Assembly (NCBI RefSeq): GCF_001194135.2
Contig: NW_026305254.1
Span: 43,086 to 83,113, forward strand
Direction of reading: 5' to 3'
DNA: 40,028 nt
DNA from: Octopus bimaculoides
Taxonomy: Eukaryota
Numbering within the stretch: the first letter of the stretch is position 1; the number at the start of each line of letters is the position of its first letter. The notes beneath the pieces were generated by a model. It had not been told where the DNA came from and did no database searches. It saw only the letters and a list, made by a program, of their open reading frames with translations. The position numbers and the translations under genes were made by a program. Shown here piece by piece: positions 8,726 through 33,281 of the stretch.

Positions 8726-8788
<63 letters not shown>

Positions 8789-13158: not shown

Positions 13159-13219
13159 GCCCCAAAAAACAAATAAAGAGATTTATACAATCAAACAGAC
13201 TCCATAACGAGCAGGTGTG

Positions 13220-13233: not shown

Positions 13234-13336
13234 CGAAGCAGACGCTTCATTTTTATGCTACTCTTAGTTTTATAAGTGACACAATATAGAGTAACTGAAT
13301 AGATTTAGAACAGACTACATATACACACAGGATAAC

Positions 13337-13372
<36 letters not shown>

Positions 13373-14254
13373 ATATATATATTAAGACAGAGAATATATT
13401 TACATGTATAGATATAAATCCACACATACACATCTGTACGTATAAGTATATACATACAGACAGAAGACAGACATGCACACATACGTACATACATAGGATG
13501 TATATATTAAATGATTCTACATGAAATATTCAAGTTCTCAACACACAGAAAGAATGTAGAATTAGCTGTTTTTGTGCGTGTGTATATTATTGTGTGGACA
13601 TCTTTCAGATATATATATCTGGTTATTAGTATACAATATAGTGTGTATATGTACGTGTATGTATGTATGTATATACGCATATATAAACATATATATATAT
13701 ATATTGTGTATGTGTATATCACTATATCAGTGTATATATATTTGTGTATACATATATATTATATATGTATGCATGTGTGTATATACATGTGTGTGTATGT
13801 GTATGTGTATGTATGTATAATATGTGAAACTGAGTGAGAAGAGATGGAGTAAATGAATTGTCACAATGAGCAATGTCCCTTCAACACACTGCTGTAAACC
13901 ATGTGTGTGTGTGTATGATGTATGTATAAGCAGATATTAGTGTTTGCATATATATATATATATATATATATATGAATAGTGTGTGTGTGTATGCAATATA
14001 TGAATATGGAAAAAGACAGAATGACTCATGGCTGTGTATAAATGAGAAATACATTAAGTGAACTGTTCCCAGCTGAAGGTAAACATCCCTCTGACACACA
14101 AACAGACATAAGATATGTGTCTAGAGTGAGGCATAGGTAGCTGTCCTTTTAATCTTTTATACTTGTTTCAGTCATTTGACTGCAGCCATGCTGGAGCACC
14201 ACCTTGAAGGGGTTTAGTTGAATCCCAGGACTTTATTTGGGAAAGAATTACACT

Positions 14255-14301
<47 letters not shown>

Positions 14302-16117
14302 GATTACCAATAAACTGCACTTCATATTCAAGGCTCTGGTGAAGCTGTAATATATTACTCAAGTACTCAGCTCTGAGTCCACAGCATCTTATAGATAGCA
14401 GAAAAAGCTGTAAGCCAAAGAAGTTCATAAGACATCTATATATATATATATATATAAATATATATATAATTTAAGTGTGTATCTACACATGTGATGCCTT
14501 AGGAAAAAGTGAACTCGTCAACTCCAGGGACTAAAAAGGAACAAGAACCACAGCATGGATCCCTAGAGATTTAAGATCAGGGTCTGTCAGCATGGTGAAA
14601 CCCTGCCGTCTGTGTGTGCATGTGACAAGAGGTCAACATAGAAGGGCACCCTGGCCACCCTCCAGCTCTAAGCTGGGTCTTGAAGCAGCGACAATCCAAT
14701 TCAAAGGCACACAGACCCAATTCACTTCTTTTGTATTAGTGAGGTGTCAGTTTTGATGGAGGGGAGGGGAGGTGTGTGAGTGTGAACACTTTTACAGGTC
14801 CCAGTTCCTGAACCGTGACCGTGCTGGAGCACTGCGTGCCACTGTCCATCTAATTTTACCCCAACCCTTGGTTCAGAGCTGGTATTCGTTTAATCAAATT
14901 GATATATTACAGACGTAACTTCAGCAAACACAAAAAAATATGTGTGTATATATATATATATAAATATAAACACACATACACATATTTATATACATACATA
15001 CACATATGTATTACACACATCTCGCTATATACATCTACAATCATTTTTACTCTGTGTGCTTGTGTGTGTGTGTGTATATATGTATATAGTAATCTGTGCC
15101 TATATATATGTGTATGTAAATAAGAGATAGCAATGAGTGTGTATACATATGTAGGTGTGTGTATGTGTAAATAATATATAGTAATGCGTGTGTGTACATA
15201 TAGATATAATATGGGTGTGTGTGTGTTGATAAGNNNNNNNNNNNNNNNNNNNNNNNNNNNNNNNNNNNNNNNNNNNNNNNNNNNNNNNNNNNNNNNNNNN
15301 NNNNNNNNNNNNNNNNNNNNNNNNNNNNNNNNNNNNNNNNNNNNNNNNNNNNNNNNNNNNNNNNNNNNNNNNNNNNNNNNNNNNNNNNNNNNNNNNNNNN
15401 NNNNNNNNNNNNNNNNNNNNNNNNNNNNNNNNNNNNNNNNNNNNNNNNNNNNNNNNNNNNNNNNNNNNNNNNNNNNNNNNNNNNNNNNNNNNNNNNNNNN
15501 NNNNNNNNNNNNNNNNNNNNNNNNNNNNNNNNNNNNNNNNNNNNNNNNNNNNNNNNNNNNNNNNNNNNNNNNNNNNNNNNNNNNNNNNNNNNNNNNNNNN
15601 NNNNNNNNNNNNNNNNNNNNNNNNNNNNNNNNNNNNNNNNNNNNNNNNNNNNNNNNNNNNNNNNNNNNNNNNNNNNNNNNNNNNNNNNNNNNNNNNNNNN
15701 NNNNNNNNNNNNNNNNNNNNNNNNNNNNNNNNNNNNNNNNNNNNNNNNNNNNNNNNNNNNNNNNNNNNNNNNNNNNNNNNNNNNNNNNNNNNNNNNNNNN
15801 NNNNNNNNNNNNNNNNNNNNNNNNNNNNNNNNNNNNNNNNNNNNNNNNNNNNNNNNNNNNNNNNNNNNNNNNNNNNNNNNNNNNNNNNNNNNNNNNNNNN
15901 NNNNNNNNNNNNNNNNNNNNNNNNNNNNNNNNNNNNNNNNNNNNNNNNNNNNNNNNNNNNNNNNNNNNNNNNNNNNNNNNNNNNNNNNNNNNNNNNNNNN
16001 NNNNNNNNNNNNNNNNNNNNNNNNNNNNNNNNNNNNNNNNNNNNNNNNNNNNNNNNNNNNNNNNNNNNNNNNNNNNNNNNAAAGATATTACAAATATATA
16101 TAAATATATATATATGT

Positions 16118-16420
16118 GGATGCGCAATGGCCCAGTAGTTAGGGCAGCGGACTCGCGGTCATAGGATCGCAGTTTCGATTCCCAGACCGGCCGTTGTGAG
16201 TGTTTATTGAGCGAAAACACCTTAAAGCCCCAGGAGGCTCCGGCAGGGGACGGTGGCGATCCCTGCTGTACTCTTCCACCACAACTTTCTCTCGCTCTTA
16301 CTTCCTGTTTCTGTTGTGCCTGTAATTCAAAGGGTCAGCCTTGTCACACTCTGTGTCACGCTGAATGTCCCCGAGAACTACGTTAAGGGTACATGTGTCT
16401 GTGGAATACTCAGCCACTTG
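16118..16420 (+). mobile_element. tRNA-derived SINE
   Basis: A-box-like TGGCCCAGTAGTTAG and B-box-like GTTTCGATTCC followed by about 220 bp of non-tRNA body. Confidence 0.7.
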
Positions 16421-16967
16421 CGAATCAGAGGTGAGAACACAGTAAGCAGGATCCCTCTGGGCCAAACAGTCTGCCTCCCAGTGTCTCAGTAGAGTCGTTG
16501 GTTGGGTACAAAATCCGACCAATGGGAACCCATAATCCTGCTGAGAGTCCAGATCCCAAAGGACCTTCCTAAAGGCCCTGGATTGTCCAAGTCTCCCAAC
16601 TACAGACAAAGGAGGATCAGTGACCTAGGGACCCGAACATTTGTCCTCCTGCTCAGATATCAGCAGGGCCACACACCCCTGTCCAGAAAGTCCACAACAC
16701 ATCCAAGTCTTTCCAAGACTTCAGACTCAAAAGGCTGATGCTTCTGACATAAGTGAAGCTGTCGACACACAAGAAAGAGTTCTCCAAGAAGTCAACGAAA
16801 GACTAGATTTTTGCATTGACCCAAGAAACTCTAAGAGCAAGTGGTTTTACTTCCTCAAACAGTGAAAGGAGGACTTGCAGCTTATGACAACAGACACAAG
16901 GCATTTGATTTGGCTCACTTGGCAAACATACACGTGCATTGTTAAAAATAACGTAATGTCCCTCTAC

Positions 16968-17051
16968 CTTCCTCGGTTTCTGTATTTGTCGTTCTTCGGA
17001 CGTCGGCCACGGGATCGAGATCTTGACCTCGAGTAGGAACGAGAGGAAGAC
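16968..17051 (-). CDS. SRSF7-like coding exon 3, RS domain (RSSSRSYSRSRSRSRGRRPKNDKYRNRG)
   Basis: Strong acceptor ttcttttttttttctcttccttttgtccttccatcttttag|, donor AAG|gtagag; 84 nt, phase 2 to 2, compatible with exon 25353-25523; not shown in the ORF track. Confidence 0.85.
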
Positions 17052-18384
17052 CTAAAAGATGGAAGGACAAAAGGAAGAGAAAAAAAAAAGAACAGGCATA
17101 TGAGATCTCATTACGTGGAAGTCACGAGAAAAAAAAAAAAGACCAATTAGATATTAGATAAAATATGGTAGATACAGGACACACAGACAGACATACACAG
17201 AATATAATGCATACTGTACATATATTCATAGAGAAGAATTAGAAATGATAGCTTATGTTAAAATATCACATCTTGTTATATATAATGATGCTAATGTAAG
17301 TACATCTATATATATGTAACCAAAACTCATTTTGCATCCAGCTAAAATTATAGGGAAAAAATCTTAAAATTTCCATTTTAATAATGTTACTTTTCTTGTT
17401 CGTTTTAAACATTGTCTTTGCTTGAAAGGACCAGTAGCCCCCATCATTCACTGCACCCAACTCTTCATCGACTTCCTGCATTCCTTTTTAAACCTAGCTT
17501 CACTTGTCCGCCACATCTGCACCGCCACCATCTCCAGCCTAATTTATGCTGTCTTTTGCTATTATCACAACATTCTTAGGGCAATGGTACCATCAACCGG
17601 TTTTCATACCACGTCTGCCTGACTCTGCCCTTCAATCTATCATCCAAACTCCCGCTTTCAAAGTGATCAAAATACCATCTACCATCAAAATTTCATATCA
17701 ATTTATGTCCCAAACACCAGATTAATTAACAATAAACTTATTTGACTAAATTCTTCATTATTTTCAAAATTAATCAAAACAAAACCTGTGTATTTCAACA
17801 GAAATATAACAATATGTCTTTACCCTAAAGACATTTAGAGAGATTTAAGGGGCCAGGAGTACCACAGTGGTGTTCCTTCACTGCTTACTGAGCATGCAGT
17901 ATAATGTGTATATAACATGGATATAGGTTTCATGTATGTATACAGTAACATGTACAAAGTATATATAATTATACAGTAATACATGTAGCTATGTGTGTGT
18001 GTGTGTGCAAAAGCGTTCATATGTATGGGTTAGCAGCGGGGGAAAGTATCAATAATATATTAACCTAACTTATGCTAGCATAGAAAACAAATGTGTGTGT
18101 GTGTGTGTGTGTACAATATCTCTTGATGTCACATGACTGACCAGACTATCAGATGTGTTACACATCACTGGTCACAATGCACTTTGCATAATTTCAGCCA
18201 CTGAATGATGGTTAGGCAAGTGGGCCAACGTCCCTACCTGATCAGAAGTGGGATTGGAGCATTGTGAAATGGAATATTTTGCTCAACAGCACAACACACC
18301 ACCCAGCCTGGGAATCAAACCCACCATCTGGTGATCATGAGTACAAAAGCCTAACCACCAGGTCACGCACCTATTTGTTTGCTG

Positions 18385-18790
18385 AAGGTGCATGGCTCAC
18401 TGGTTAGAGAGTCATGGCTAGTGAGTTCAATTCCTGGACAGGGCTGTGTCTTGTGTTCTTGAGCAAAATTATATTCCACGTTGTTCTCGTTCACTCATCA
18501 GTAGAAATGAGAGGGGACATGACTGGTGCCAAGCTGTATTGGCCCCTTTGCCCCCTTTGCCTTTCCCTTGGACAACATCAGTGGCATGGAGAGGGGAGGC
18601 TGGCATGCATGGGCAAACGTTGGTCTTCCACAAACAACCTTGCCTGGACTTGTGCCTCAAGGGGAACTAATCCCATGGCCCTTTATCCTTTACTCAATGT
18701 ACATACAATGGCATGGCGAAGGGAAGCTGGTCTTCCACAAACCTTGCCTGGACTTGTGCCTTGGAGGGGAACTTTCTAGGTTCAATCCCN
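18385..18790 (+). mobile_element. tRNA-derived SINE with internal duplication
   Basis: Head tggctcactggttagag...gagttcaattcc; ggtcttccacaaac...cttgcctggacttgtgcct occurs twice. Confidence 0.6.
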
Positions 18791-18939
18791 NNNNNNNNNG
18801 GGGGGGGGGGGTCTTTACTTTTTTATAGATGTTTGAGTGTGAGGTGACTATATGATTGCAAAAGTATGTTCGTGTGTGTGTGTAAATGTATGCAACTAAA
18901 CAGAGATGCACAATGTAAGTATATGTAGCTTCAAAGATA

Positions 18940-18985
<46 letters not shown>

Positions 18986-19059
18986 AACAGTGTTGATGTA
19001 TACGTAAGTAGTCTCAAGTATGGCAGTGACCACTTAAAATCATAAAGCTATACATGCGC

Positions 19060-19093
<34 letters not shown>

Positions 19094-22000
19094 NNNNNNN
19101 NNNNNNNNNNNNNNNNNNNNNNNNNNNNNNNNNNNNNNNNNNNNNNNNNNNNNNNNNNNNNNNNNNNNNNNNNNNNNNNNNNNNNNNNNNNNNNNNNNNN
19201 NNNNNNNNNNNNNNNNNNNNNNNNNNNNNNNNNNNNNNNNNNNNNNNNNNNNNNNNNNNNNNNNNNNNNNNNNNNNNNNNNNNNNNNNNNNNNNNNNNNN
19301 NNNNNNNNNNNNNNNNNNNNNNNNNNNNNNNNNNNNNNNNNNNNNNNNNNNNNNNNNNNNNNNNNNNNNNNNNNNNNNNNNNNNNNNNNNNNNNNNNNNN
19401 NNNNNNNNNNNNNNNNNNNNNNNNNNNNNNNNNNNNNNNNNNNNNNNNNNNNNNNNNNNNNNNNNNNNNNNNNNNNNNNNNNNNNNNNNNNNNNNNNNNN
19501 NNNNNNNNNNNNNNNNNNNNNNNNNNNNNNNNNNNNNNNNNNNNNNNNNNNNNNNNNNNNNNNNNNNNNNNNNNNNNNNNNNNNNNNNNNNNNNNNNNNN
19601 NNNNNNNNNNNNNNNNNNNNNNNNNNNNNNNNNNNNNNNNNNNNNNNNNNNNNNNNNNNNNNNNNNNNNNNNNNNNNNNNNNNNNNNNNNNNNNNNNNNN
19701 NNNNNNNNNNNNNNNNNNNNNNNNNNNNNNNNNNNNNNNNNNNNNNNNNNNNNNNNNNNNNNNNNNNNNNNNNNNNNNNNNNNNNNNNNNNNNNNNNNNN
19801 NNNNNNNNNNNNNNNNNNNNNNNNNNNNNNNNNNNNNNNNNNNNNNNNNNNNNNNNNNNNNNNNNNNNNNNNNNNNNNNNNNNNNNNNNNNNNNNNNNNN
19901 NNNNNNNNNNNNNNNNNNNNNNNNNNNNNNNNNNNNNNNNNNNNNNNNNNNNNNNNNNNNNNNNNNNNNNNNNNNNNNNNNNNNNNNNNNNATTTTAAAA
20001 AAACATAACCCACTTCATTATTATTATTAATAATAATAATAATAATAATAGTAGAAAACAAAAAACTACAATCCCTTAACATTTGAAATTGCAAGAATTT
20101 GGAATATGGAAATTGTAAAGGTCTTTTGCTTGTAAGAATTGGTTGATTGGGAAAAGTAAGGAAAGGTACAGAGAAACGGTTGTGTAGAGATTCTAGAGAA
20201 AGTTTGCCTCTTCGGAAAACCAGGAAAGATTATCAGGAGGGTTCTAAGCACTATTGTGGATGTCTAAGGTTACCTAGGTTGTAACCTGCTACCCACATAA
20301 ATTCTACCAGGAATTAGAACAAACCCAAGTTAAAATCAATAATAATAATAATAATAATAATCCTTTCTAATATAGGCACAAGGCCTGAAATTTTTGGGAG
20401 GGAGAGGGGACTAGTTGACTACATCATCCCCAGTTCTCAAATGGTACTTAATTTATTGACCCCATAAGGATGAAAAGCAAAGTAGATTTTGGCAAAATTT
20501 GAACTCAGAACCTAGCGGCAGATGAAATACTGCTAAGCTTTTCGCCTGGCAAACTATTCTGCCAGCTCACCACCTTCATAATAATCTTTTCCTCCTAAAA
20601 GCACAAAGCCTGAAATTTTGAGGGAGGGGGGACTAGTTGATTACATCGACCTCAGTGCTTCACTGGCACTTAATTTATTGACCCCTAAAGAGATGAAAAA
20701 CAAAGTCAACCTCGGCAGAATTTGAACTCAAGAACGTAGGCATTTTGCCCAGCATGCTAACGAATCCACCAGTTCACCACTTTATGTAATAATAATAATA
20801 ATAATAATAATATCTTATTGAAAATGCCTATAGGAAACCCTTAATGATTACTTTGAACAACAATAAACCTAAGAAATATGAATATAAAAATAAAAGAAAG
20901 ACTCTTTTCCCCCCCAGATTAATTCTACTTAACTCTTTTCTTGTTTCAGCCACTTGACTGTGGCCATGCTGGAACACCGCCTTTAGTCGAACAAATTGAC
21001 TCCAAGACTTATTCTTTGTAAACCTAGTGCTTATTCTATCGGTCTCTTTTGCTGAACCAAGATGTAAACAAACATACACACACACATGTAATATATACGA
21101 CAGGCTTCTTTTAGTTTGTCTACTAAATCTGCTCACAAGGCTTTGGTCGGCCTGAGGCTATAGTAGAGAACACTTGTCCTCGGTGAAACTAGATAGTTGG
21201 AAAGCAAGCTCCTTACCATGCAGCCACTCCTTCACTCCATAGAAATTAAATATAAAACTGTAGGAGTTATAGAGAACCTATGTGTGTGTGTGTGTGTGTG
21301 CGTGTGTACTATTAAATATTTTGAAATCCTGAATAATTTTTTTTGAATGCATTGAATAAAGAAACCTGGTTACATTATCAATTCTATTCCGTTATTATTG
21401 TTGTTTGTTTTGATCAATGCAAGCCCCAGTTTTTGTGGTTTATTTCATCTTTTGATTTGCATAGTCCTCAGTGTCTTGGGCACACAACGCAAAAAAAAAA
21501 AAAACTATTATTATTATTACTAGTATTAAATAGAGTGACTATAGCCCTATTTTTTATTTTATTTTATTAAGAAAGAACAATGCAGGTAGCTAACGACAAG
21601 ATATTGTATCTTTACCAATTCTCATTAGTTCAGTCAACAGAAGACAGCAAGATCACCTTACACATGACACTATACTATATATATATATATATATATANNN
21701 NNNNNNNNNNNNNNNNNNNNNNNNNNNNNNNNNNNNNNNNNNNNNNNNNNNNNNNNNNNNNNNNNNNNNNNNNNNNNNNNNNNNNNNNNNNNNNNNNNNN
21801 NNNNNNNNNNNNNNNNNNNNNNNNNNNNNNNNNNNNNNNNNNNNNNNNNNNNNNNNNNNNNNNNNNNNNNNNNNNNNNNNNNNNNNNNNNNNNNNNNNNN
21901 NNNNNNNNNNNNNNNNNNNNNNNNNNNNNNNNNNNNNNNNNNNNNNNNNNNNNNNNNNNNNNNNNNNNNNNNNNNNNNNNNNNNNNNNNNNNNNNNNNNN

Positions 22001-23098
22001 NNNNNNNNNNNNNNNNNNNNNNNNNNNNNNNNNNNNNNNNNNNNNNNNNNNNNNNNNNNNNNNNNNNNNNNNNNNNNNNNNNNNNNNNNNNNNNNNNNNN
22101 NNNNNNNNNNNNNNNNNNNNNNNNNNNNNNNNNNNNNNNNNNNNNNNNNNNNNNNNNNNNNNNNNNNNNNNNNNNNNNNNNNNNNNNNNNNNNNNNNNNN
22201 NNNNNNNNNNNNNNNNNNNNNNNNNNNNNNTTTAAGTCTATCAGCTGTGAGATTTACCAGATTTTTCCCCTTTTTTCCCAAATTCATCATCATCGTTTTA
22301 ACGTCCGCTTTCCATGCTAGCATGGGTTGGACAATTTGACTGAGGACTGGTGAACCAGATGGCTACACCAGGCTCCAATCTGATTTGGCAGAGTTTCTAC
22401 AGCTGGATGCCTTTCCTAACGCCAACCACTCAGAGAGTGTAGTGGGTGCTTTTACGTGTCACCCGCACGAAGGCCAGTCAGGCGGTACTGGCAACGGCGA
22501 CGCTCAAAATGGTGTCTTTTATGTGCCACCCGCACAAGCCAGTCCAGGGGCACTGGCAACGATCTCACTCGAAAATCCTATATATACATATTTTTCATTA
22601 TTTATAAATTTTATGATTATCATTTCTTAAAATTGATTTCTTATTGGAGAGTCTTTGTTGAAGTGTGTCCATAGTAATGTAAATGTAAAACACAAATATA
22701 CCAGCTCCATACTTCAGTAGGAAACGAGTACCTACCATTTACATACACAGACATATATATATATACATATAAACCTATAAATTAGATAAACAGTCCTAAT
22801 TTAGTTATTTCTCTGCAGAATGAAAAACTGATGAAGAACCTTAACTGATTTTCGAGTCTTATTGAACTCTTATCAGAGGTAGATACATCAGTTTGATCAA
22901 TCCTAGAGAAAGAAGCAGCCATTCATAAACGCACACGCACGTATACAAATGGAGATTTGATAAAAAAAGAAAAGTGATCAATTTTGAAAAATACAAAAAC
23001 AAGAAGTCGTTGAGTTTTAATTAGCTAAGAAAAATTAATTAGCTAGGATGCTAAATGACGAAATATCTAATCGTAGTCATACATACATACGTACATAC

Positions 23099-23784
23099 CT
23101 GAAACAACTGCAGCTGGATCGTGCATCACCGACAGTAATCTTTTTTTTGTTTATTTTTTTTTTGTTTGTCTCATTGTGATTAATTTATTTCTCAAAAAGC
23201 TTTCCAAAAAACTGACCACCATGCATCCACCACTAGCCATATTATTTCCTTCCAGTTGCCATTTGGGTTCCGGTAACATAACCATCATCATCATCATCAT
23301 CATCACCACCTTGTACACATTTTTCTATCATATACCATGCTCCACAAAACCATCATGGCACCTTGTCGGGAGAGAGCTTGGAGGACCAGTTTCCTCCTAT
23401 CACCATCAGTTGCAGCAGCAGCATCAGGAAGACAGCGTTTCCATCACAACATGCCCAAACTAACCACCAGAATCGTTTCGCCGTCATTTTCCTCCATTTT
23501 TTTTTCCTTCCATTTACAATCGATTCACATTTTTTTTGTGATATTTTTGATACTTTTCCTCTAGAGACCACCAGACGAGATGAGACGAGAACCAGGCGAA
23601 GGGGAGGCCCCCCGCGCACGCCAACAACGGCGGGGGGGCCCCCAGCCAGCCAGCCAGCCAAGCCAAGGGGGGCACCACATACCAGAACAAAAACCAGACC
23701 AGACCAGTTTTATATTTGAGACCAAAACCATCACCATCACCAAAAACCATTCACAGAACCATACCATAGCCATTAACCACATCC
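23099..23784 (-). other. Candidate PTC-containing poison or alternative terminal exon of the SRSF7-like gene
   Basis: Acceptor cttacctatttttatcag| after a long pyrimidine tract; donor TTTCAG|gtatgt at 23098. Spliced to exon 2 it reads RDVVNGYGMVL then TGA (23753-23751). Two AATAAA near the 3' end. Confidence 0.5.
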
Positions 23785-24231
23785 CTGATAAAAATAGGTA
23801 AGACTGTGAAAGAATCGGTTGTCTGCTAACAGCAATATGGTTTGTTAAAAACACACAGAGAACAAAAATAATAAGGAACGGAGAGAAAAGGAAAGAGAGA
23901 AAGAGAGAGAATTGTTTTTTTTTTTTTAATACAGGGGGGAGAAAAAATATATCTAAATTAAACAACATAAACAGTATTGAGACAAATCTACATACACACG
24001 TGTACGTATATGTGTATGTATATATATAAAAATATATATATGTATATGTACACACACATACACATATATACAACATGTGCATATCCTCATCATCAATATA
24101 TATGCACACACACACACACATGTATATATATGTATACATATACACACATATAAACAAATATACGTTTATATATGTATACATGTGTGTGTGTGTGTATATA
24201 CACATAGATTATATATATGAANNNNNNNNNN

Positions 24232-24292
<61 letters not shown>

Positions 24293-24704
24293 CTTCACAA
24301 TTCACAGTTGAATAAAAAGAAGGATTTAAAAAAAGTTAATTACAGAGAATAAACAAATTAAACTGAAAAAAATAATTACACACTCACGCATACAGATACA
24401 CACATAAATTTATACAAACGCCAACGTGCATACAAATATGAATACACAGTCATACACACACACACACACACACATTCATACACATTACAGACACACATAT
24501 TTACATATGTAAATAAAGAATTTGTATGATTAATTCCTGAAAATTGAAGAAATTATGGAATAATTTTAAAATAAATAAAACAAAATTAAAAAGGAAAAAA
24601 TATTTTTTTAAATATCGGTTACAAAGAAAAATAGTATAATTATAATAATAATAATAATAATAATAATACCCAATTTGGGAACCACTGGTGTACATTGCTT
24701 TGTC

Positions 24705-25195
24705 TTAGTATAAAAGATGAGCTACAGCAAATATTCTGCTCAATACCACAGATTTGCTTGTCAGTCGTTTGACCTTAACCAGCTGAGCATGTCCCTCGGT
24801 GGCTGACGATATGTGCATCTCTATCACGAGCAGAAGTAGTGGGGGAGCATCAGAGCCATGTGTTGAGAGGAATTCTTTGGGGTTTGAATAATTTTACCTC
24901 TGGAAACATGGGTGTTTCGTTCAACATCCTTAAACAACCCTTATTCAGGGACCTTTTGAGTGGGACGGGCTAATCGACCTGAAGGAAATTCTAATCGGGC
25001 CGCACCTGCAAGGTCATGCACTGTTTAACTTGGTGTGAAGTCACCATGTCACGCACATATGGTTGTGAGGCATGTGCCTGGTGTACCCTGATCAGACGGG
25101 TAGTCACGATGGGTATACTGGGCTTCGTATATTTTACCCCAGGGTCACTTTGATGACATGTGCTGCTCTCTCACTCAATAATAATAATAGTAATG
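24705..25195. mobile_element. Interspersed repeat of about 480 bp ending at an (AAT)n tract
   Basis: Higher-GC block bounded by (AAT)n tracts; recognised as a common repeat type in such genomes; family not determined. Confidence 0.45.
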
Positions 25196-25352
25196 ATCAA
25201 ATAGTACGAAAATACTTAAAAAATCAAAAAGTGAAAATGCAATGGAGAAAAATGAAAAGAACATACATACAATGTATGCAATAGAAATACATGTGGATAC
25301 ACATACACACAATGTACACAAAAGGAAAGGAAAATATGATGGTGGTAGATAC

Positions 25353-25523
25353 CTGCTGACGTAGCGGCGTCTGGGGTAGCGTCTGGAGTCGTCACAGTCA
25401 CGGAAGAAGTGTCCCTTGCGTCCGCACTGGTAGCAACGTAGGTTGGGGTCAAACACACGCCGGCGCCTCCCCCTTGTGCGGGGCCGTGCCAATGAGACGC
25501 GGATCCGACCACCACTCAACAAT
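25353..25523 (-). CDS. SRSF7-like coding exon 2: end of RRM plus CCHC zinc knuckle
   Basis: Acceptor ctctccag|, donor CAG|gtatct; LLSGGRIRVSLARPRTRGRRRRVFDPNLRCYQCGRKGHFFRDC (CX2CX4HX4C; the FDPN.RCY.CG.KGH...DC pattern is SRSF7/9G8-type); phase 2 to 2. Confidence 0.92.
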
Positions 25524-26076
25524 CTGGAGAGGCAACGTCAATGCAGCCATCAAATTGAATTGGTAAATGGAGAGACGTGACCATCAAGATGGAGTGAAGA
25601 TTCGGCAAGAGGTTTTGAAAGAAAAAAAGGAAAGAAAGAAAAGAAAAAAAATGACAAAATTACTAATGACGAAGTTTTTTTTTTTAATAATCAACAAATC
25701 AACATAAATGAAGACATGGCAGCATGATTAAGAAGCTTGTCTTGCAATCTCGTGATCCTGGGTTAATCCCAGACTACAGATTACTGAATTATCAGAAAGG
25801 GTGGGACGATTTGTGAGCTCCTCGTACTGCAGATTTCTGCTGGTGCTTCAGGACAAAAATTCACATGAGTCTCAGCTCGCACAGCAAATTACTCGTACAA
25901 TGGGGCACTTATACTGTAAGGTCCTACTGTATGTGACTGTCGATAGCAGATATGAAGGGGATCCTGAAGATGTAGCTCAGAGGAGAGGGAGAGACAAGTG
26001 GGGGGTGGGGGTGATGCCCACACTGACACACTCCCCCCCCACACACACACACACGAAAACAGTAAACAGCCCTTAC

Positions 26077-26351
26077 TTGCCATCCATCTCTTTGATGGCT
26101 GCATCAGCATCTTCGCGATATTTATAAACGATGAAGGCAAAGCAAGGGGGGCTCTTGGCCACCCACACCTCCAGCAGCTTGCCAAACTTCTCAAACACGC
26201 ACTCCAGCTCCCTCTTTGAGGGATCCTCGCCCAAGTCAGCCACGTGGACCCGGACTCCGTCTTCTGAAGGGCTGCGACTCCGACTACGGCTGTGGCTGTA
26301 ACTGTAGCTGTACCAACGCCTCTCCTGTGACCGGGAGCGTGAACGGCCCAT
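26077..26351 (-). CDS. SRSF7/SRSF3-family SR protein, coding exon 1: N-terminal RS stretch plus RRM
   Basis: Acceptor tttcatttgcag| then CCACCATGG (perfect Kozak, ATG at 26351); VRVHVADLG...ELECVFEKFGKLLEVWVAKSPPCFAFIVY...DADAAIKEMDG; donor AA|gtaagg. Confidence 0.92.
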
Positions 26352-28427
26352 GGTGGCTGCAAATGAAAGAAAAGCGACAAAAATTATTGCAACAGAAAAT
26401 TTTTTCCAAAAATATGTAAAAAGCTTGCTTCCCAACCACATGATTTCAAGTTCAGTCCCACTGCATGGCACCATAGTGTCTTCTGCAACAACCTCAGGCT
26501 GACCAGAGCTTTGTGAGTAAATTTGGTAGACGGAAACTAGAAGAATCCCATCACATATATATACACACATCATATATTGGCATGGATGAGTGGTAAGAAG
26601 TTTGCTTCTGAAGCACATACTTCTTGGCTCTGTCCCATTGCATGGCACCTTAGGCAAGTGTCTTCTACCATAGCCCCAGGCTGACCACAACCTGGAGAGT
26701 TGATTTGATATAGAGGGAAACTGAAAGAAGCACGTCCTGTACATATATATCTATGTGCGTGTTCCTTTATGTCTCTGTGCCCAACCACTGCTTGACAACT
26801 GGTGTTGGTGTGTTTACATCCCTGTAACTTAGCAGTACCGGGGATGATTCATTAAACTAAAAATTCTCTTAGGCAGTGCTCCAGCATGGTCCCCAGTCAA
26901 ATGACTGAAACAAATGAAAGGTAACATTGTTTAGTTGTTGGCCAGTCCTGATGGAGTCTTGTAGTATAGCACTGGGCTAACCAAAGCCTGGTGAGTGGAC
27001 CTGGCAGGTGGAAACTGAAAGGAGTCTACTGGTTATACAAATATAGGTGAAAGTTAATGACAGCAAGGGCATCCAGTTGTTGAAAAATATGCCTCAACGC
27101 ATTCAATCCAATCCATGCAAGCATGGAAAAGTGGATGTCGAAACAATGCCGGTGATGATTCACAATAGAAGATTAAATGCGAACTCAGTCATGTTTGAAA
27201 GATAAACAAATTTATGCAACAGAAATTATAAATCACATTCTATAGACCTCAAACTTACATGTCTGTTTCCCTGTTGATTAGTTTTCCTGTTTATGGTAAG
27301 CTGGAAAGAGAAAGCAGTGGCTGTGTTGAGAGAGATGCANNNNNNNNNNNNNNNNNNNNNNNNNNNNNNNNNNNNNNNNNNNNNNNNNNNNNNNNNNNNN
27401 NNNNNNNNNNNNNNNNNNNNNNNNNNNNNNNNNNNNNNNNNNNNNNNNNNNNNNNNNNNNNNNNNNNNNNNNNNNNNNNNNNNNNNNNNNNNNNNNNNNN
27501 NNNNNNNNNNNNNNNNNNNNNNNNNNNNNNNNNNNNNNNNNNNNNNNNNNNNNNNNNNNNNNNNNNNNGTGGAGTCTCGTGGGGTGGGGGTGGGGGCTAC
27601 GGATGTGGACTGGGTGCCAGAGAGGAGGCAGTTTGGGAACTGCTGATCTAAGAGGATAGGTACGCTGAGTGTTACAACTGGTCGGACCGTCGGGTTCCAA
27701 GTCCACAGCTGAGGCTGGATCTGGGGATCCGTATTAGGGTTCCGTTATACCTGGTATTATATGAGAAGAAAGAGCCAATCGAAGGCAGAACAAATATCTC
27801 AAGTCATCTAGAATAATCCAATTAGGGTAAGTGTTACAGCAGGGATAACCCGTCATCAGAGACAAGGTATGAAGGTTTTAGAAATATATAAGGGAAAAGT
27901 TACAGTTTACAAAGAATAAAATCTATTCAGTTTATAAGGAATACAAGTCATATAATGAACATGCATATGGTTTACACGCGTGCGCCTGTCGAAGTGTATA
28001 TATATGTATATATATATATAACGAGCTTATATCATCAGCGTATTTCCAAGGAGTTTCCACTCCACGACGTGTCTACATAAGTGTATATATCTCTACGCGC
28101 ACACAGGCATATATATACACACATATAAAAGCACAGACGCAAGGATGGTTATATACATATCAAGGTCTAAATGTCTTGACATACTTTCTCGCCGATCAAG
28201 TAAATTAGTTTTTCCGATTTCGTGCAGATTTTCATAATTGAAAATCCTAGATTAATTAATTACCACAGGTCTGCATTAATTAATATATAATTAAAATGAA
28301 ATTGTTTTATAAAAGAATTACAATTAACAATCCTCTAAATACCAACGTAGGAAAAGAGGCAAAAGAAACTATACACACACATCTATACACGTACACACGT
28401 ATATATATATATATACATATACACGTA

Positions 28428-28461
<34 letters not shown>

Positions 28462-28978
28462 CACACAAACATCTATATATACTTCGTATGTGTATTTCGT
28501 GTGCAAGATTCTTGATGTGGATACGTGTGTTTAATTGTATCTATATATACGTACACACGCATATATATACATATACACGTGTGTATATATACATACACAC
28601 ACCAATCATCGAAGGACACATCTTCTACATATACGTAAATATACATTATATATACGTGCACACATATACACTAACAGATATTCGTATATGTATATATGCA
28701 TACACATCCCATCAACATAGACACATCAATTATATCCATGCATACATTNNNNNNNNNNNNNNNNNNNNNNNNNNNNNNNNNNNNNNNNNNNNNNNNNNNN
28801 NNNNNNNNNNNNNNNNNNNNNNNNNNNNNNNNNNNNNNNNNNNNNNNNNNNNNNNNNNNNNNNNNNNNNNNNNNNNNNNNNNNNNNNNNNNNNNNNNNNN
28901 NNNNNNNNNNNNNNNNNNNNNNNNNNNNNNNNNNNNNNNNNNNNNNNNNNNNNNNNNNNNNNNNNNNNNNNNNNNNNN

Positions 28979-29028
<50 letters not shown>

Positions 29029-29809
29029 GTATTAACATTTAAAATGTCGTCTGATAGGAAACGTAGTCATATATGTGGATATATAAAGAGCTCGTTTTAT
29101 GGTTTCAAAGGACGAATAAAGACAAATCAATGCTTCAAAAGAAAGTCGAAAGGTTGCATTGTAAAGATGACCATAATAAAAGATCAGATGGTGAAGGAGA
29201 GATGCCAAATGAGGGCGGATAAAAAAGAGAAGCAAGAGGCAGAGATCGTTAGCCATACATACTGAACAAGTTCCTTCTTGGTATTAACGATACATACGTC
29301 ACGACTTTAAGTTTCGTAGCATTCGGCAGTTTCCGGTAAACTTCGGAGACACTCATAGTTGTACACTACACACACACACACAGATAGATAAGTCTATATA
29401 TTCTGCGAGAGATAGGCAAATATATATATATATATATAATAATAATAATTAATTTGTGCGTGCACATGTGTATGTGTGTGTGTATGGATCGATGTATGTA
29501 CGCAAGGATGTGTATGCGTGCATATTATAAAGTGTGGGGGGGGGAGATAACTTTTAAAATTGGCTTCTAATATTTTTTCATCTAATTATAAATGATCGTT
29601 GTTTTGCTTGCAAAAACTTTCAGTTATATGCTATAAAAAAAAAACATTAATTAATTTCCAGTATTTAATTTTTTTAAACGTTGTCGTAATATTGTCATCA
29701 CGCACAAAATGCCAGCTTCTAAATGCTGTTCTCTGATTGGATAAAAATAATCAAATTTTAATCATCTCTAACATTTTTCTGAAATTTTCCTGAAATAAAT
29801 AAATAATAT

Positions 29810-30130
29810 CGTCAGATTCAGCGTGGATAATTATATCAATACACCAAACACAAAAGTTTTCTGGAGGAGAAACGAAACGTAACGCATCATTCGCCGACTT
29901 CGTTTTTGTATGAGTCCGACCCGTTCACCATAAAGACTCGATTTTCTCTCAAATTTAATCTTTTTGGGGGTTTATTTTGGATCCTAAAATTGGTAAGTCT
30001 TTTTTTCATCCTTAATCGTACGATATAGAGTTTATAGAATACAAATTCGGAGGAACTTTCCGAGAATGCCAAAAACGGAACGACTTACGACTGGATGAAA
30101 CGATGACATTCTAAGATGTCTTTTTTTCGT
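29810..30130. promoter_or_regulatory. Candidate promoter / non-coding first exon of the SRSF7-like gene
   Basis: CpG-rich unique island about 3.7 kb upstream of the acceptor at 26357; minus-strand donor TC|GTAAGT (30088); also a plus-strand donor TG|GTAAGT (29993). Confidence 0.35.
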
Positions 30131-30717
30131 CCAACCTCCGATAATAATGTTCAGCTATTTAACGATGGTATTTTTATGAACCTAAACATGATATTAAAGC
30201 CTTCATTTCCTCTAGCAATTTGTCCTGTGTCGCCTTTGATAATAGCAACGTTGTATCTGTTATTCATTCATATATTCCGGTCAATAGACTGTGGCCACGC
30301 TGGGGCACCGCCTTGCGGAATGAGTCAATCCCAGTAATTATTATCTTTTTTTATAGTACTTGTTCAGTCTTTGCTGAACTGCGAAGTTACGGGGACGTAA
30401 ACACACCAACACCTGTTGTCAAAGGGTGATGGAAGCGGTGGTGGGGACAAACACACGCACACACATCCAGCTGATCCAATGACAGTTCTGCAAGTCAAGG
30501 CGAAAGATTGCCCCTATATAATACTTAGCTCCTGTGGAGGGCACTTTTGAGGTCTTCGGCCCCACTATCGGGCAGCTAAGAATTTTGCCAGCTGGTTTGC
30601 ACACTACGGCAGCACCATTGTCTTGTTTATTCTGTGTAACGTCCTTTCTTTTTTTTATTTCAGATGCTTCAGCGTTTGGGTGAACCACTCTGATAGTGTT
30701 TCTCCTCTCTAAGAACA

Positions 30718-31276
30718 ATGGGACGTGGAAAAGGCCTTAACAAGGAAGAGAAATCTATCATCATGAAGGAAAGTACCAAAGGCACCTCTCTTCATGTCAT
30801 TGCGGAGAAGTTAGGCCGTCATGTGGACACGGTTAGACGATTCCTGAAGGACCCTTCACCAAGGAAGAAACGATCCGATTGTGGGACCTCCAAAACTGTG
30901 ACAGCTAGGGATTTAAGGAATATTGGCCACAAGTTACGTGAGAAACCTGGACAAACAAGCAAAGACATTTTCGCTGCCTCCGGACTCCCTCATGTACCGA
31001 AAACCACCAGAAATCGCATCCTTGGGACCATGGCTTCTGTTGTTCAAGAACCCCTGAAACTGCCTCCTTTAATGCCACATCGAAAATCTTTGGTCCATCA
31101 TTAAACAAGATGTTTATGCCGATGGATGCCAATTTACATCGAAAGATGTCTTATGGGTGACCATCAAAACTGCCACAGAGGCAATCCAACCTGCTACTAT
31201 TAAGAAATTGACAGATTCCATGATTAATAAGGTTTTTGAAGTTATCCGTTGAAACGGCACTCATGTGGCTAAATAA
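30718..31276 (+). pseudogene. Internally deleted Tc1/Tc3-like transposase
   Basis: N-terminal paired HTH-like region (MGRGKGL...IAEKLGRHVDTVRRFL...SGLPHVPKTTRNRIL) joined out of frame at about 31079 to the C-terminus IENLWSIIKQDVYADG.QFTSKD.LW...IKKLTDSM...FEVIR*NG; central DDE core missing; internal stop. Confidence 0.85.
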
Positions 31277-31991: not shown

Positions 31992-33281
31992 TATGAGGGG
32001 GTACTAAAAAGTTCTTAGCTTTACGGGTATCATGAAAGGATAGAGGTGTTACCTTTACAGGGGAGGTAGGACAACTGTTGAAGAGAAAATACGCAAAAAA
32101 TCCTGATGGTATACAATATATCTTTCTCTTTTTTGCAGATTTAACGCATGATGGCAACTCCTGCAGTGGATTTTGGTAAAGTTGAAGCACGGGCAATCAT
32201 GAAGTTCCTTTTTTTGCAAGGCAAAGGAGCAGCAGAAATCCATGGCAAGATGAAAAAAGTCTTGAAAGATGGCTGCCCATCTTACTCCACAGTGAAAATC
32301 TGGGTGTCACGGTTTCGGACTGGTCATTTCGAGGTCACAGATGAACCCCGGTCAGGACGGCCAGCTTCTGCCACCACAGAGGACAAAACTGATGCTGTGC
32401 ATGTCATGATTCTCGAGGACCGCCGGATTTCCGATAAAAGCATAGCTGAAAGTCTGGGGATTTCCCGTGAAAGAGTTAGTCACATCATCTACAACATTCT
32501 GGATATGAGAAAGCTTTCTACAAAATGGGTCCCGAAATTCCTGAATGCTGATCAGAAGCGCATGAGAGTGGCGGCGTCAAAGGCGATTTTGGACCGGTTT
32601 GCGGCAGGAGAGGCTGATTTTATGGCTCGTTTAGTGACCATGGATGAAACTTGGCTTCATCATTACGATCCTCAGACCAAGCAGCAATCAATGGAGTTGC
32701 CCCACAGCGATCCACCACCTCCCAAGAAGTTCCGGAGCCAGGAGTCAGCTGGGAAGATTCTGGCTTCAGTGTTTTGGGACAAAGATGGAGTACTCCTCAT
32801 AAAATACCTGCCTGTGGATTGCACCAGGAACACAGAATACTACATTTCTCTGTTGGATGACCTGCGTGAAGCTTTGCAGCAGAAACGCTCTGGCAAGCTG
32901 AGCCGTGGCATCCTCTTTTTGCTGGACAATGCAAAAGTACATGAAGCTCTACGGAAAATACGTAACTTTGGGTTTGAATTGGTAAACCACCCACCTTACT
33001 CGCCTGATTTGGTCCCCTCTAACTATCACCTCTTTCCACAACTGAAGAAACATCTCAATGGAACGAAATTTTACTCCGATTCAGAAGTGATCGCTGCTAC
33101 AGTGGCCTGGTTGGAGGCCCAACCTTCCGAGTTCTTTTTACAAGGCTTAGAAAAACTGAAGGACCACTGCAATAAGTGTGTGAATCTGAAAGGGGAGTAT
33201 GTTGAATAAAATCATAGTTACCTGATCCTCCTCTATTTTCTTTCACCCAAAACCAGGAATTTTTGCAGCATCTCCATCATA
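31992..33281 (+). mobile_element. Full-length mariner (Tc1/mariner) DNA transposon
   Basis: TA flanks at 31992-93 and 33280-81; degenerate TIRs tgagggggtactaaaaagttcttagcttt / tgatggagatgctgcaaaaattcctggttt; about 1.29 kb. Confidence 0.85.
32148..33209 (+). CDS. Mariner transposase, 353 aa, uninterrupted ORF, catalytic triad D166-D260-N292
   Basis: Motifs PRSGRP, WVPKFL, MDETW, DNA, HPPYSPDLVPSNYHLF; the last motif is canonically YSPDLAPSDY. Confidence 0.93.
   Translation: MMATPAVDFGKVEARAIMKFLFLQGKGAAEIHGKMKKVLKDGCPSYSTVKIWVSRFRTGHFEVTDEPRSGRPASATTEDKTDAVHVMILEDRRISDKSIAESLGISRERVSHIIYNILDMRKLSTKWVPKFLNADQKRMRVAASKAILDRFAAGEADFMARLVTMDETWLHHYDPQTKQQSMELPHSDPPPPKKFRSQESAGKILASVFWDKDGVLLIKYLPVDCTRNTEYYISLLDDLREALQQKRSGKLSRGILFLLDNAKVHEALRKIRNFGFELVNHPPYSPDLVPSNYHLFPQLKKHLNGTKFYSDSEVIAATVAWLEAQPSEFFLQGLEKLKDHCNKCVNLKGEYVE

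What the first reader, a model, noticed from the sequence alone, without database searches (positions are those of the whole stretch)
23099..23784. Candidate autoregulatory poison exon in the same intron position as vertebrate SRSF7
Seen: within the 8.3-kb intron between the zinc-knuckle exon and the RS exon, otherwise mostly microsatellites and SINEs, lies a 686-nt unique block bounded by a good acceptor (23785) and donor (CAG|GTATGT, 23098). Inclusion gives a stop after 11 codons, about 650 nt upstream of the next junction. The block holds GAT-repeat runs and two AATAAA (23184-89, 23150-55). Knowledge: vertebrate SRSF7 and SRSF3 autoregulate through an ultraconserved PTC exon after the RRM/zinc-knuckle exons, SRSF7 binds GAY-rich motifs, and stops more than 50 nt upstream of a junction trigger NMD. 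Inference: a conserved or convergent AS-NMD (or intronic polyadenylation) feedback loop producing an RS-truncated RRM+ZnK isoform in a mollusc.
Basis: partly seen in the sequence, partly recalled or inferred. Interest (0 to 1): 0.7.

Follow-up and report, generated by a model that had tools for sequence, protein, structure and literature searches.

The report
Conserved poison exon in octopus SRSF7-like gene
The 686-base block is a real, already annotated alternative exon that puts an early stop codon into an octopus splicing-factor gene, an ordinary kind of self-limiting switch whose unusual feature is a UGGU-rich core conserved across molluscs.

Summary
The window is Octopus bimaculoides scaffold LGKD02010370.1. 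The gene lies on the minus strand and encodes an N-terminal RS stretch, an RRM, a CCHC zinc knuckle and a C-terminal RS domain. RefSeq already annotates isoform X2 (XP_052834171.1, 159 aa). It equals exon 1 + zinc-knuckle exon + the 11 codons read from block 23784..23099. The O. vulgaris annotation carries the same tail.

The first 250 nt of the exon are 98.8% identical between the two octopuses. Coding exons are 97% and intron 83-85%. The core aligns with the same exon in cuttlefish and, more weakly, in a bivalve-like transcript. That transcript shows the full cassette with the RS domain out of frame.

- The gene is a paralogue, not the SRSF7 orthologue.
- The GAY signal is one (GAT)7 microsatellite.
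- Both AATAAA are lost in O. vulgaris.
- Vertebrate SRSF7 poison-exon tails are unrelated in sequence.

The conserved signal is strand-specific TGGT: 39/kb against 5.5/kb in the intron, with no ACCA. It recurs in cuttlefish, bivalve and beetle counterparts. NMD and autoregulation remain inferred. Verdict: a new member of a known kind.

The parts
26077..26351 (-). Coding part of exon 1: Kozak CCACCATGG, N-terminal RS stretch and most of the RRM. The acceptor puts the exon start at 26356; donor GT at 26076-75.
   Evidence: The translation is identical to RefSeq X1/X2.
25353..25523 (-). End of the RRM, linker and CCHC zinc-knuckle exon. It ends in phase 2 (AG|); donor GT at 25352-51.
   Evidence: Pfam RRM_1 and zf-CCHC on the O. 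sinensis full-length protein.
23785..23884 (-). Conserved intronic flank with the pyrimidine tract and the acceptor AG (23786-85).
   Evidence: 95% identity to O. vulgaris against 83% for the upstream intron. It aligns to the cuttlefish acceptor region, E=3e-12.
23099..23784 (-). Poison cassette exon, 686 nt. Stops are present in all three frames and the length is not a multiple of 3.
   Evidence: The RefSeq XP_052834171.1 and O. vulgaris CAI9744134.1 tails are read from it. Sequence. Single copy in the window.
23751..23753 (-). Premature stop codon TGA, 652 nt upstream of the exon's donor.
   Evidence: The end of the O. vulgaris first CDS maps exactly here.
23535..23784 (-). Highly conserved 5' core of the exon. 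It is rich in (A/T)TGGT (16 TGGT, 64/kb) and includes a GC-rich stretch.
   Evidence: 98.8% identity to O. vulgaris. It aligns to the cuttlefish exon (z=8-12) and the bivalve-like exon (z=3-4.5). TGGT counts.
23677..23685 (-). Internal donor-like site CTG|GTATGT (GT at 23682-81). If used, it would give a 102-nt version of the exon that still contains the stop.
   Evidence: Read from the sequence. Usage was not tested.
23284..23304 (-). (GAT)7 microsatellite, the source of all six GAYGAY matches in the exon.
   Evidence: One unit is changed to TAT in O. vulgaris.
23150..23189 (-). A-rich stretch with two AATAAA hexamers (23189-84, 23155-50). The ATG at 23174-72 corresponds to the start of the second O. 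vulgaris CDS.
   Evidence: In O. vulgaris the first hexamer is AATTAA and the second is deleted. In the window the ATG is out of frame with the RS exon.
22999..23098 (-). Donor GTATGT and the conserved downstream intronic flank.
   Evidence: 98% identity to O. vulgaris over 100 nt. It is the only AG|GT[AG][AT]GT in the intron.
16968..17051 (-). First RS-domain exon (84 nt, phase 2 in and out). The donor AAG|GTAGAG has its GT at 16967-66.
   Evidence: The junctions are confirmed by O. sinensis X1, 330 aa.
15234..16080 (.). Assembly gap that most probably hides the terminal RS exon (364 nt of CDS in O. vulgaris).
   Evidence: O. vulgaris sequence 600-1000 nt downstream of that exon maps to window 15123-14686, and the exon itself finds no match.

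Best explanation
Block 23784..23099 is a conserved poison cassette exon of an SRSF7-like SR-protein gene. The protein has an N-terminal RS stretch, an RRM, a CCHC zinc knuckle and a C-terminal RS domain.

Shown:
- The exon is spliced to the zinc-knuckle exon in annotated octopus isoforms.
- It adds 10 codons and a TGA and shifts the frame, so the mRNA encodes RRM + zinc knuckle without the RS domain.
- Its 5' 250 nt and its splice-site flanks are conserved at or above coding-exon level.
- The same exon, with an alignable core, exists in cuttlefish and in a bivalve-like transcript. In the latter it is a true cassette followed by the RS exon out of frame.

Inferred:
- The stop lies 652 nt before the next junction, at least two junctions lie downstream, and the 3' UTR would be very long. 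The inclusion mRNA should therefore be an NMD target under either the exon-junction or the long-3'UTR model.
- The strand-specific array of (A/U)UGGU motifs is the enhancer that a trans-acting protein reads. The most economical candidate is the gene's own RRM + zinc-knuckle protein.
- High protein level would then drive inclusion and lower productive mRNA. This is homeostatic negative feedback as in vertebrate SRSF3/SRSF7.
For: - The window is 100% identical to O. bimaculoides LGKD02010370.1.
- RefSeq XP_052834171.1 'SRSF7 isoform X2' (159 aa) equals exon 1 + exon 2 + the poison-exon (PE) tail exactly. O. vulgaris CAI9744134.1 has the same tail.
- In O. vulgaris the next annotated CDS (171 aa) starts at an ATG inside the exon. 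It is reproduced exactly by 68 nt of PE + the 84-nt RS exon + the 364-nt terminal exon, which implies use of the PE donor.
- Identity to O. vulgaris: PE 5' 250 nt 98.8%, exons 97.1-97.5%, introns 83-85%, 100 nt after the donor 98%.
- A cuttlefish transcript contig joins the zinc-knuckle exon to a 208-nt homologous exon.
- The bivalve-like contig L004 has zinc-knuckle exon + PE (~172-175 nt) + RS exon in a shifted frame.
- Local alignments beat shuffles: octopus-cuttlefish z=11.6/8.1, octopus-bivalve 4.5/3.2, cuttlefish-bivalve 5.5/3.5.
- Similar tails occur in Mytilus californianus X4 and Pomacea X2.
- TGGT: 27 in 686 nt against 8.6±2.6 in dinucleotide shuffles (0/500), 5.5/kb in the rest of the intron, and ACCA 0. 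Densities are 35-58/kb in the counterparts of cuttlefish, bivalve and three beetles, against 4-7/kb in their introns.
- Background: SR genes autoregulate through poison exons, and position can be conserved across Metazoa (PMC4379411; 10.64898/2026.05.22.727176).
Against: - There are no RNA-seq junction counts, no NMD-inhibition data and no binding data. Decay and feedback are analogy, not observation.
- The exact reconstructed 171-aa second CDS is not in the protein collection. Use of the octopus PE donor therefore rests on a length and coordinate match.
- The cuttlefish contig runs through the PE donor into the intron.
- The binding specificity of this paralogue is unknown, and UGGU could be read by another factor.
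- It is not established whether NMD in molluscs follows the 50-nt rule (PMC6173133).
Confidence: 0.7

Rival explanations
1. The block is an alternative terminal exon. Cleavage and polyadenylation at the AATAAA hexamers near its 3' end give a stable mRNA for an RS-less RRM + zinc-knuckle protein, with no NMD involved.
For: Two AATAAA lie in an A-rich stretch 50-90 nt before the block's end. The annotated CDSs stop inside the block, and the tool reports CDS ranges only, so the mRNA 3' ends are unknown. Early polyadenylation inside SR-gene poison exons has been seen in frog and zebrafish SRSF5 (PMC4379411).
Against: In O. vulgaris one hexamer is AATTAA and the other is deleted. The donor and the next 100 nt are 98-100% conserved. 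The second O. vulgaris CDS requires splicing from the block's donor. The bivalve-like transcript is spliced on both sides. The cuttlefish contig reads through its own AATAAA. The A-run could also give oligo-dT internal-priming artefacts.
Confidence: 0.1
2. The inclusion mRNA is mainly translated rather than degraded. It would yield a functional truncated protein, dominant-negative or regulatory. As in human SRSF7 'Split-ORFs', a second ORF starting in the exon might protect the mRNA from NMD.
For: The O. vulgaris annotation has exactly this layout. ORF1 ends in the exon. ORF2 starts at an ATG in the exon and is in frame with the RS domain. The human precedent is described in 10.64898/2026.05.22.727176.
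Against: In the window the same ATG (23174) is out of frame (76 nt against 68 nt to the donor) and stops after 7 codons. The frame that leads into the RS exon has no ATG after its last stop. The tails differ in length, frame and stop position between octopus, cuttlefish, bivalve and snail, so selection acts on the RNA and not on the peptide.
Confidence: 0.15
3. The exon is a poison exon, but inclusion is set by another regulator that binds UGGU/GU-rich RNA. That could be the true SRSF7 orthologue or another RNA-binding protein. This would be cross-regulation rather than autoregulation.
For: The motif (TGGT) is not the GAY motif reported for SRSF7 (PMC9022966). Nothing is known about what this paralogue binds. 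SR proteins are known to cross-regulate one another's poison exons (PMC4379411).
Against: The TGGT-rich element travels with this gene family in molluscs and beetles. The simplest explanation of that is self-recognition. This is not a proof.
Confidence: 0.25
4. The exon is splicing noise or a gene-prediction artefact with no function.
For: The isoforms are computational annotations. Splice-like sites and stops occur by chance in long introns.
Against: The exon shows 98.8% identity over 250 nt, at or above coding exons. Its splice sites and flanks are conserved. Homologous exons occur in cuttlefish and bivalve transcripts. It carries a 7-fold, strand-specific motif enrichment.
Confidence: 0.03

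Closest known systems
Vertebrate SRSF7 (9G8) poison cassette exon, and the related SRSF3 exon 4
   Same: Both lie in an SR-protein gene with RRM + CCHC knuckle + RS domain. In both, the alternative exon sits in the intron between the knuckle exon and the first RS exon, within about one residue in the protein alignment. Both have an early in-frame stop, very high conservation of the exon and its flanks, and transcripts that retain an adjacent intron.
   Different: The octopus gene is a paralogue with an extra N-terminal RS stretch and only 42-45% RRM identity. The exon sequences and encoded tails are unrelated (RFLRLSQSP against DVVNGYGMVL). The enriched motif is UGGU, not GAY. A Split-ORF start codon is present in O. 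vulgaris but not in frame in O. bimaculoides.
Unproductive splicing of SRSF5 orthologues, positionally conserved across Metazoa and fungi (Lareau & Brenner 2015, PMC4379411)
   Same: A PTC-introducing alternative region is kept at one intron position of an SR gene over very long evolutionary distances. Its form varies between cassette exon, intron retention and early polyadenylation. Here the form is a cassette in molluscs and an alternative 3' splice site in beetles.
   Different: The gene family is different. Here a short sequence core is still alignable between cephalopods and a bivalve, and a specific tetranucleotide is enriched in every lineage examined.
Beetle 'SRSF7-like / RSZ21-like isoform X2' variants of the same paralogue family
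   Same: The protein family is the same. The PTC element lies after the knuckle exon, with TGGT at 35-46/kb and M/V/L/W/Y/G-rich tails.
   Different: In Hypothenemus hampei the element is a 222-nt extension of the terminal exon made by an upstream acceptor, not a cassette. It has no alignable similarity to the mollusc exon beyond motif content (z 0.5-1.3).

Membership tests
Poison cassette exon (AS-NMD) of an SR-protein gene | An alternative exon that is actually spliced into some mRNAs of the gene | tested here: met
   RefSeq X2 (159 aa) and O. vulgaris CAI9744134.1 read into it. Homologous exons occur in the cuttlefish and bivalve-like transcript contigs. No read-level data were available.
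Poison cassette exon (AS-NMD) of an SR-protein gene | Inclusion introduces a premature in-frame stop | tested here: met
   TGA after 11 codons. Stops are present in all frames, and 686 mod 3 = 2.
Poison cassette exon (AS-NMD) of an SR-protein gene | The stop lies more than 50-55 nt upstream of a downstream exon-exon junction (cassette, not terminal exon) | tested here: inconclusive
   The geometry is met, at 652 nt. Use of the donor in octopus is inferred from the O. vulgaris second CDS, from donor conservation and from the bivalve cassette. The cuttlefish contig is unspliced at this donor.
Poison cassette exon (AS-NMD) of an SR-protein gene | Conservation well above the flanking intron | tested here: met
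   98.8% over the 5' 250 nt against 83-85% in intron. The core aligns with cuttlefish and bivalve.
Poison cassette exon (AS-NMD) of an SR-protein gene | The inclusion isoform is stabilised when NMD is blocked | not testable with these tools
   Needs cycloheximide/emetine treatment or UPF1/SMG1 inhibition followed by RT-PCR or RNA-seq.
Poison cassette exon (AS-NMD) of an SR-protein gene | The gene's own protein promotes inclusion (autoregulation) | not testable with these tools
   The only support is an indirect cis signal: a strand-specific TGGT array conserved with the gene family.
Orthologue of vertebrate SRSF7 | RRM + CCHC zinc knuckle + C-terminal RS domain | tested here: met
   Pfam RRM_1 and zf-CCHC (the latter just under its cut-off). 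The closest solved structures are SRSF3 and SRSF7.
Orthologue of vertebrate SRSF7 | It is the closest relative of SRSF7 in its own genome | tested here: not met
   In cuttlefish the adjacent head-to-head gene is 75% (RRM) and 64% (knuckle region) identical to human SRSF7, against 45% and 48% for this gene. The human query sequence was written from memory.
Homologue of the vertebrate SRSF7 poison exon itself | Same intron position | tested here: met
   The junction follows ...RRRRSR in vertebrates and ...RRRYVSR in octopus, within one residue in the alignment. The intron phase of the vertebrate gene was not checked.
Homologue of the vertebrate SRSF7 poison exon itself | Recognisable sequence similarity of the exon | tested here: not met
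   Only the encoded tails could be compared, and they show no likeness. No vertebrate exon DNA was fetched.
Intronic polyadenylation terminal exon | A conserved poly(A) signal at the 3' end of the block | tested here: not met
   Both AATAAA are absent from O. vulgaris.
SRSF7-type Split-ORF transcript | A start codon in the poison exon, downstream of the stop and in frame with the RS domain | tested here: not met
   Met in O. vulgaris. In the window the ATG at 23174 is out of frame and stops after 7 codons.

The most novel reading that the evidence does not exclude
The PTC-introducing element after the zinc-knuckle exon of this SRSF7 paralogue may be ancestral to protostomes. It would have been kept for more than 500 million years as an array of (A/U)UGGU motifs, as a cassette exon in molluscs and as an alternative 3' splice-site extension in beetles. 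Those motifs would be the binding sites of the paralogue's own RRM + zinc knuckle. The genome comparison would then reveal both a very old sequence-defined poison element and the RNA specificity of an unstudied SR protein that vertebrates appear to lack.
Probability: 0.35. Interest if true: 0.55.

Novelty: new member of a known kind. Interest (0 to 1): 0.4.

Why it matters
Poison exons in SR-protein genes are well studied in vertebrates, where they are ultraconserved and are being shown to be essential. Almost nothing is documented for lophotrochozoans.

This case shows that an SR-gene poison exon in molluscs can be as conserved as coding sequence. A short core survives between cephalopods and bivalves. 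A simple, testable cis code (UGGU repeats) accompanies the element in two phyla. That gives a concrete handle for three things:
- testing whether NMD-coupled homeostasis of splicing factors operates in molluscs;
- finding what this uncharacterised SRSF7 paralogue binds;
- correcting annotation.

On the last point, the O. vulgaris gene is split into two CDSs at the exon, and the O. bimaculoides X1 protein is truncated by an assembly gap.

It does not change the general picture. The mechanism proposed is the expected one.

Tried and rejected
- Known RNA family in the block: Rfam at permissive E-values gave nothing inside 23099-23784. The only hits were sub-threshold miRNA-like matches in the TA/TG microsatellite at 23990-24225.
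- Stable RNA structure of the conserved 250 nt: z=-0.33, no signal.
- A protein-coding gene on either strand of the block: only short ORFs without matches.
- Split-ORF in the window: the ATG is out of frame.
- Exact look-up of the reconstructed O. vulgaris 171-aa ORF2: not in the collection.
- Genomic or transcript loci for P0004, P0006 (Mytilus), P0024 (Pomacea) and P0121: not on record. Gastropod and Mytilus evidence is therefore at protein-tail level only.
- Homology with the vertebrate SRSF7 poison exon: the tails are unrelated.
- Alignable mollusc-beetle similarity: not significant under a motif-preserving shuffle.
- GAY motifs as the cis signal: all six GAYGAY come from one microsatellite, and the cuttlefish PE and one of the three beetle elements have none.
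- Literature: no paper found on a cephalopod or mollusc SR-gene poison exon. Königs et al. 2020 is not held.
A self-BLAST was used instead.

Full report
**1. What is in the window**

A tblastn with human SRSF7 (sequence written from memory) finds one gene, on the minus strand. Reading the sequence gives the following structure:
- Exon 1 carries the start codon at 26351 in a CCACCATGG context, an N-terminal RS stretch and most of the RRM. It ends at 26077.
- The linker and CCHC-knuckle exon is 25523..25353.
- An 84-nt RS exon is 17051..16968.
- The intron between the last two is 8301 nt, of which 1451 are N.

The window is 100% identical, gap for gap, to Octopus bimaculoides scaffold LGKD02010370.1.

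**2. The observation**

- acceptor AG at 23786-85;
- block 23784..23099, 686 nt;
- donor CAG|GTATGT;
- reading frame R-DVVNGYGMVL-TGA, with the stop at 23753-51, 652 nt before the donor;
- two AATAAA hexamers;
- a (GAT)7 run.

The exon length is 2 mod 3, so inclusion also shifts the frame. The block is single copy in the window, whereas other parts of the intron carry interspersed repeats and microsatellites.

Taken alone the sequence evidence is modest. The acceptor has 14 of 20 pyrimidines, and stops are expected in non-coding DNA. However, AG|GT[AG][AT]GT occurs only once in the intron, at this donor.

**3. Independent evidence that it is an exon**

- A protein search with the predicted inclusion product returned O. 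vulgaris CAI9744134.1 with 100% identity over 100% of the query.
- Its cluster contains RefSeq XP_052834171.1, 'serine/arginine-rich splicing factor 7 isoform X2 [Octopus bimaculoides]'. At 159 aa it is letter for letter exon 1 + exon 2 + the 11 codons of the block. The junction 25353>23784 is therefore already annotated on this very scaffold.
- Isoform X1 (177 aa) is the skipping form. O. sinensis X1 (330 aa) shows the complete RS domain.
- In the O. vulgaris genome locus (L001) the tool reports CDS ranges. The first CDS ends exactly at the TGA in the block.
- A second CDS of 171 aa starts at an ATG inside the block. I can reproduce its length and both end coordinates only as 68 nt of the block up to its donor + the 84-nt RS exon + a 364-nt terminal exon. 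This implies a transcript model that uses the block's donor.
- That reconstructed protein is not in the collection as an exact sequence, so this step remains an inference.

**4. Conservation**

Identity of the window against O. vulgaris:

| Region | Identity |
|---|---|
| Exon 1 | 97.5% |
| Exon 2 | 97.1% |
| Introns | 83-85% |
| 100 nt before the acceptor | 95% |
| First 250 nt of the block | 98.8% |
| Remaining 436 nt of the block | 89.4% |
| 100 nt after the donor | 98% |

Evidence from other taxa:
- A cuttlefish RNA-derived contig (L002, 98% identical to Acanthosepion pharaonis) joins the knuckle exon to a 208-209-nt exon lying 1.8 kb into the corresponding intron of the A. pharaonis gene (L003). 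It then runs on through the GTATGT donor into the intron.
- A contig whose protein is closest to Mytilus (82%) contains the knuckle exon, a ~172-175-nt exon with stops, and then the RS exon in a shifted frame. This is the complete cassette.
- The 5' cores align colinearly, as ATGGTT.TG..AATGGT.TTTGGTGATG.T.GGT.
- The alignment scores exceed dinucleotide shuffles and a stricter motif-preserving chunk shuffle: octopus-cuttlefish z=11.6 and 8.1, octopus-bivalve 4.5 and 3.2, cuttlefish-bivalve 5.5 and 3.5.
- Annotated short isoforms of Mytilus californianus (…SRKVVLV…) and Pomacea canaliculata (…REWYGMVSA) have tails of the same kind.
- Tail length, frame and stop position differ between lineages. 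The constraint is therefore on the RNA, not on the peptide.

**5. The cis signal**

All six GAYGAY matches come from the single (GAT)7 run. It carries a substitution in O. vulgaris, and the cuttlefish exon has no GAYGAY at all.

The striking signal is TGGT:
- There are 27 copies in 686 nt (39/kb), and 64/kb in the conserved 250 nt.
- Dinucleotide shuffles give 8.6±2.6 (0 of 500 reach 27).
- The rest of the intron has 5.5/kb, and the coding exons 0-12/kb.
- The reverse complement ACCA does not occur once.
- The same enrichment is found in O. vulgaris (39/kb), cuttlefish (53/kb) and the bivalve-like exon (58/kb). Their flanking introns have 4-7/kb.

A strand-specific, conserved motif array inside a regulated exon is what an exonic enhancer bound by a sequence-specific protein looks like. 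Which protein binds it cannot be determined here.

**6. What the gene is**

Its nearest solved structures are SRSF3 and SRSF7, and it has RRM_1 and a zinc knuckle. It is not the SRSF7 orthologue.
- In cuttlefish a head-to-head neighbouring gene is 75% identical to the human SRSF7 RRM and 64% identical in the knuckle region. This gene scores 45% and 48%.
- The family (N-terminal RS stretch, 'PPCFAF' RRM, 'FDPNxRCYxCG' knuckle) is found in molluscs, annelids, many insects, rotifers and hemichordates.
- The true vertebrate SRSF7 short isoforms end in ...RRRRS-RFLRLSQSP (mammals, birds), RFLHLSRS… (fish) or RYLYLLGGGIT (frog).
- The vertebrate junction is thus at the same place, within a residue, as in octopus. 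The inserted sequence is unrelated.
- 'Same position' is supported. Homology of the exon is not, and convergence or turnover is at least as likely. Turnover is what Lareau & Brenner documented for SRSF4/5/6 (PMC4379411).

**7. Beetles**

Many beetle 'isoform X2' proteins of this same family end after the knuckle in M/V/L/W/Y/G-rich tails.
- In the Hypothenemus hampei genome the element is a 222-nt extension of the terminal exon, produced by an upstream acceptor.
- Two beetle-like transcript contigs contain the element followed by the C-terminal RS/RD exon out of frame.
- TGGT is again at 35-46/kb, against 3.9/kb in the intron.
- The beetle and mollusc elements do not align beyond motif content (z 0.5-1.3, one pair 2.5).
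- What is shared is the position, the outcome and the motif, not a demonstrable common sequence.

**8. Mechanism**

Shown: a conserved alternative exon that truncates the reading frame before the RS domain.

Inferred: the inclusion mRNA is an NMD substrate.
- The stop is followed by two or more junctions and by more than 1 kb of downstream sequence.
- That satisfies both the junction-based and the long-3'UTR models (PMC6173133).
- Which model applies in molluscs is unknown.

Inferred by analogy with SRSF3/SRSF7 and other SR genes: the protein binds the UGGU array and promotes inclusion, giving negative feedback.

Alternatives:
- Cross-regulation by another factor.
- Some translation of the truncated protein.
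- Early polyadenylation. This is disfavoured as the conserved function, because both AATAAA are lost in O. vulgaris while the donor region is nearly invariant.
- A Split-ORF like that of human SRSF7. It is annotated de facto in O. vulgaris, but it is not in frame in O. bimaculoides.

**9. Other checks**

There is no Rfam family in the block, no unusual folding energy, and no convincing ORF on either strand. I found no paper describing a poison exon in a cephalopod or mollusc SR gene.

**10. Verdict**

It belongs to a well-known class and is already present in RefSeq as an unnamed isoform. The orthology, the GAY motif and the poly(A) details do not hold.

What is new is modest:
- coding-level conservation within octopuses;
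- a core shared with cuttlefish and a bivalve;
- a UGGU motif array that recurs in the same gene family in beetles.

Noticed in passing
window 15234-16080 (N gap) and 16964-16968: The terminal RS exon of the gene (364 nt of CDS in O. vulgaris) appears to lie in the assembly gap. RefSeq isoform X1 of O. bimaculoides (177 aa) therefore ends artificially, by reading through the RS-exon donor into a TAG. O. sinensis X1 has 330 aa.
   Followed up: partly
L001 (O. vulgaris OX597842.1) 10001-21857 and 22472-30852; window 23174-23172: The O. vulgaris annotation splits this one gene into two CDSs at the poison exon. The second starts at an ATG inside the exon, a layout like the human SRSF7 Split-ORFs. 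In the window the same ATG is out of frame because an A-rich run differs by 8 nt.
   Followed up: yes
L003 (Acanthosepion pharaonis) 1-2854, minus strand: The true SRSF7 orthologue (75% identical to the human RRM) sits head to head with the paralogue in cuttlefish. It is not within the window, nor within 10 kb upstream in O. vulgaris. Whether it has its own poison exon could not be checked.
   Followed up: partly
window 23590-23672 (minus strand): There is a GC-rich stretch (GGCTGGCTGGCTGGCTGGGGGCCCCCCCGCCG...GCGCGGGGGGCCTCCCC) inside the exon. Between the two octopuses it differs only by a 2-nt GC indel. It is absent from the 208-nt cuttlefish exon. The folding energy of the region is not unusual, and its role is unexplained.
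   Followed up: partly
window 23677-23685 (minus strand): An internal donor-like CTG|GTATGT lies in the fully conserved part. If used, it would give a 102-nt poison exon closer in size to those of cuttlefish and bivalve.
   Followed up: no
L007 (Hypothenemus hampei) 6659-6880; L005, L006: In beetles the same gene family makes its PTC isoform with an upstream alternative 3' splice site, not a cassette. The 222-nt extension is TGGT-rich and ends ...TGGTCTGGTTTTTAG, which resembles CTGGTCTGGTCTGGTTTTTG in the octopus exon.
   Followed up: partly
window 32148-33209 (+) and 30718-31104 (+): An intact 353-aa mariner/Mos1-type transposase ORF (Pfam HTH_48 and Transposase_1) lies here, with a separate 128-aa Tc3-type HTH fragment upstream of it.
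   Followed up: partly
window 39238-39993 (-) and about 6964-11276 (+): A Kelch-repeat coding exon lies at the right edge of the window. On the other side of the SR gene, an annotated 665-aa gene without Pfam hits lies on the plus strand (from L008).
   Followed up: no
window about 28185-28235 (minus strand): This region aligns to the first annotated exon of the O. vulgaris model (MKVSTKK...). The upstream ORF is broken by an indel in the window. The N-terminal extension in CAI9744134.1 is therefore probably 5' UTR, and the MGRS start at 26351 the true one. The intermediate piece encoding RKQTS could not be located.
   Followed up: partly
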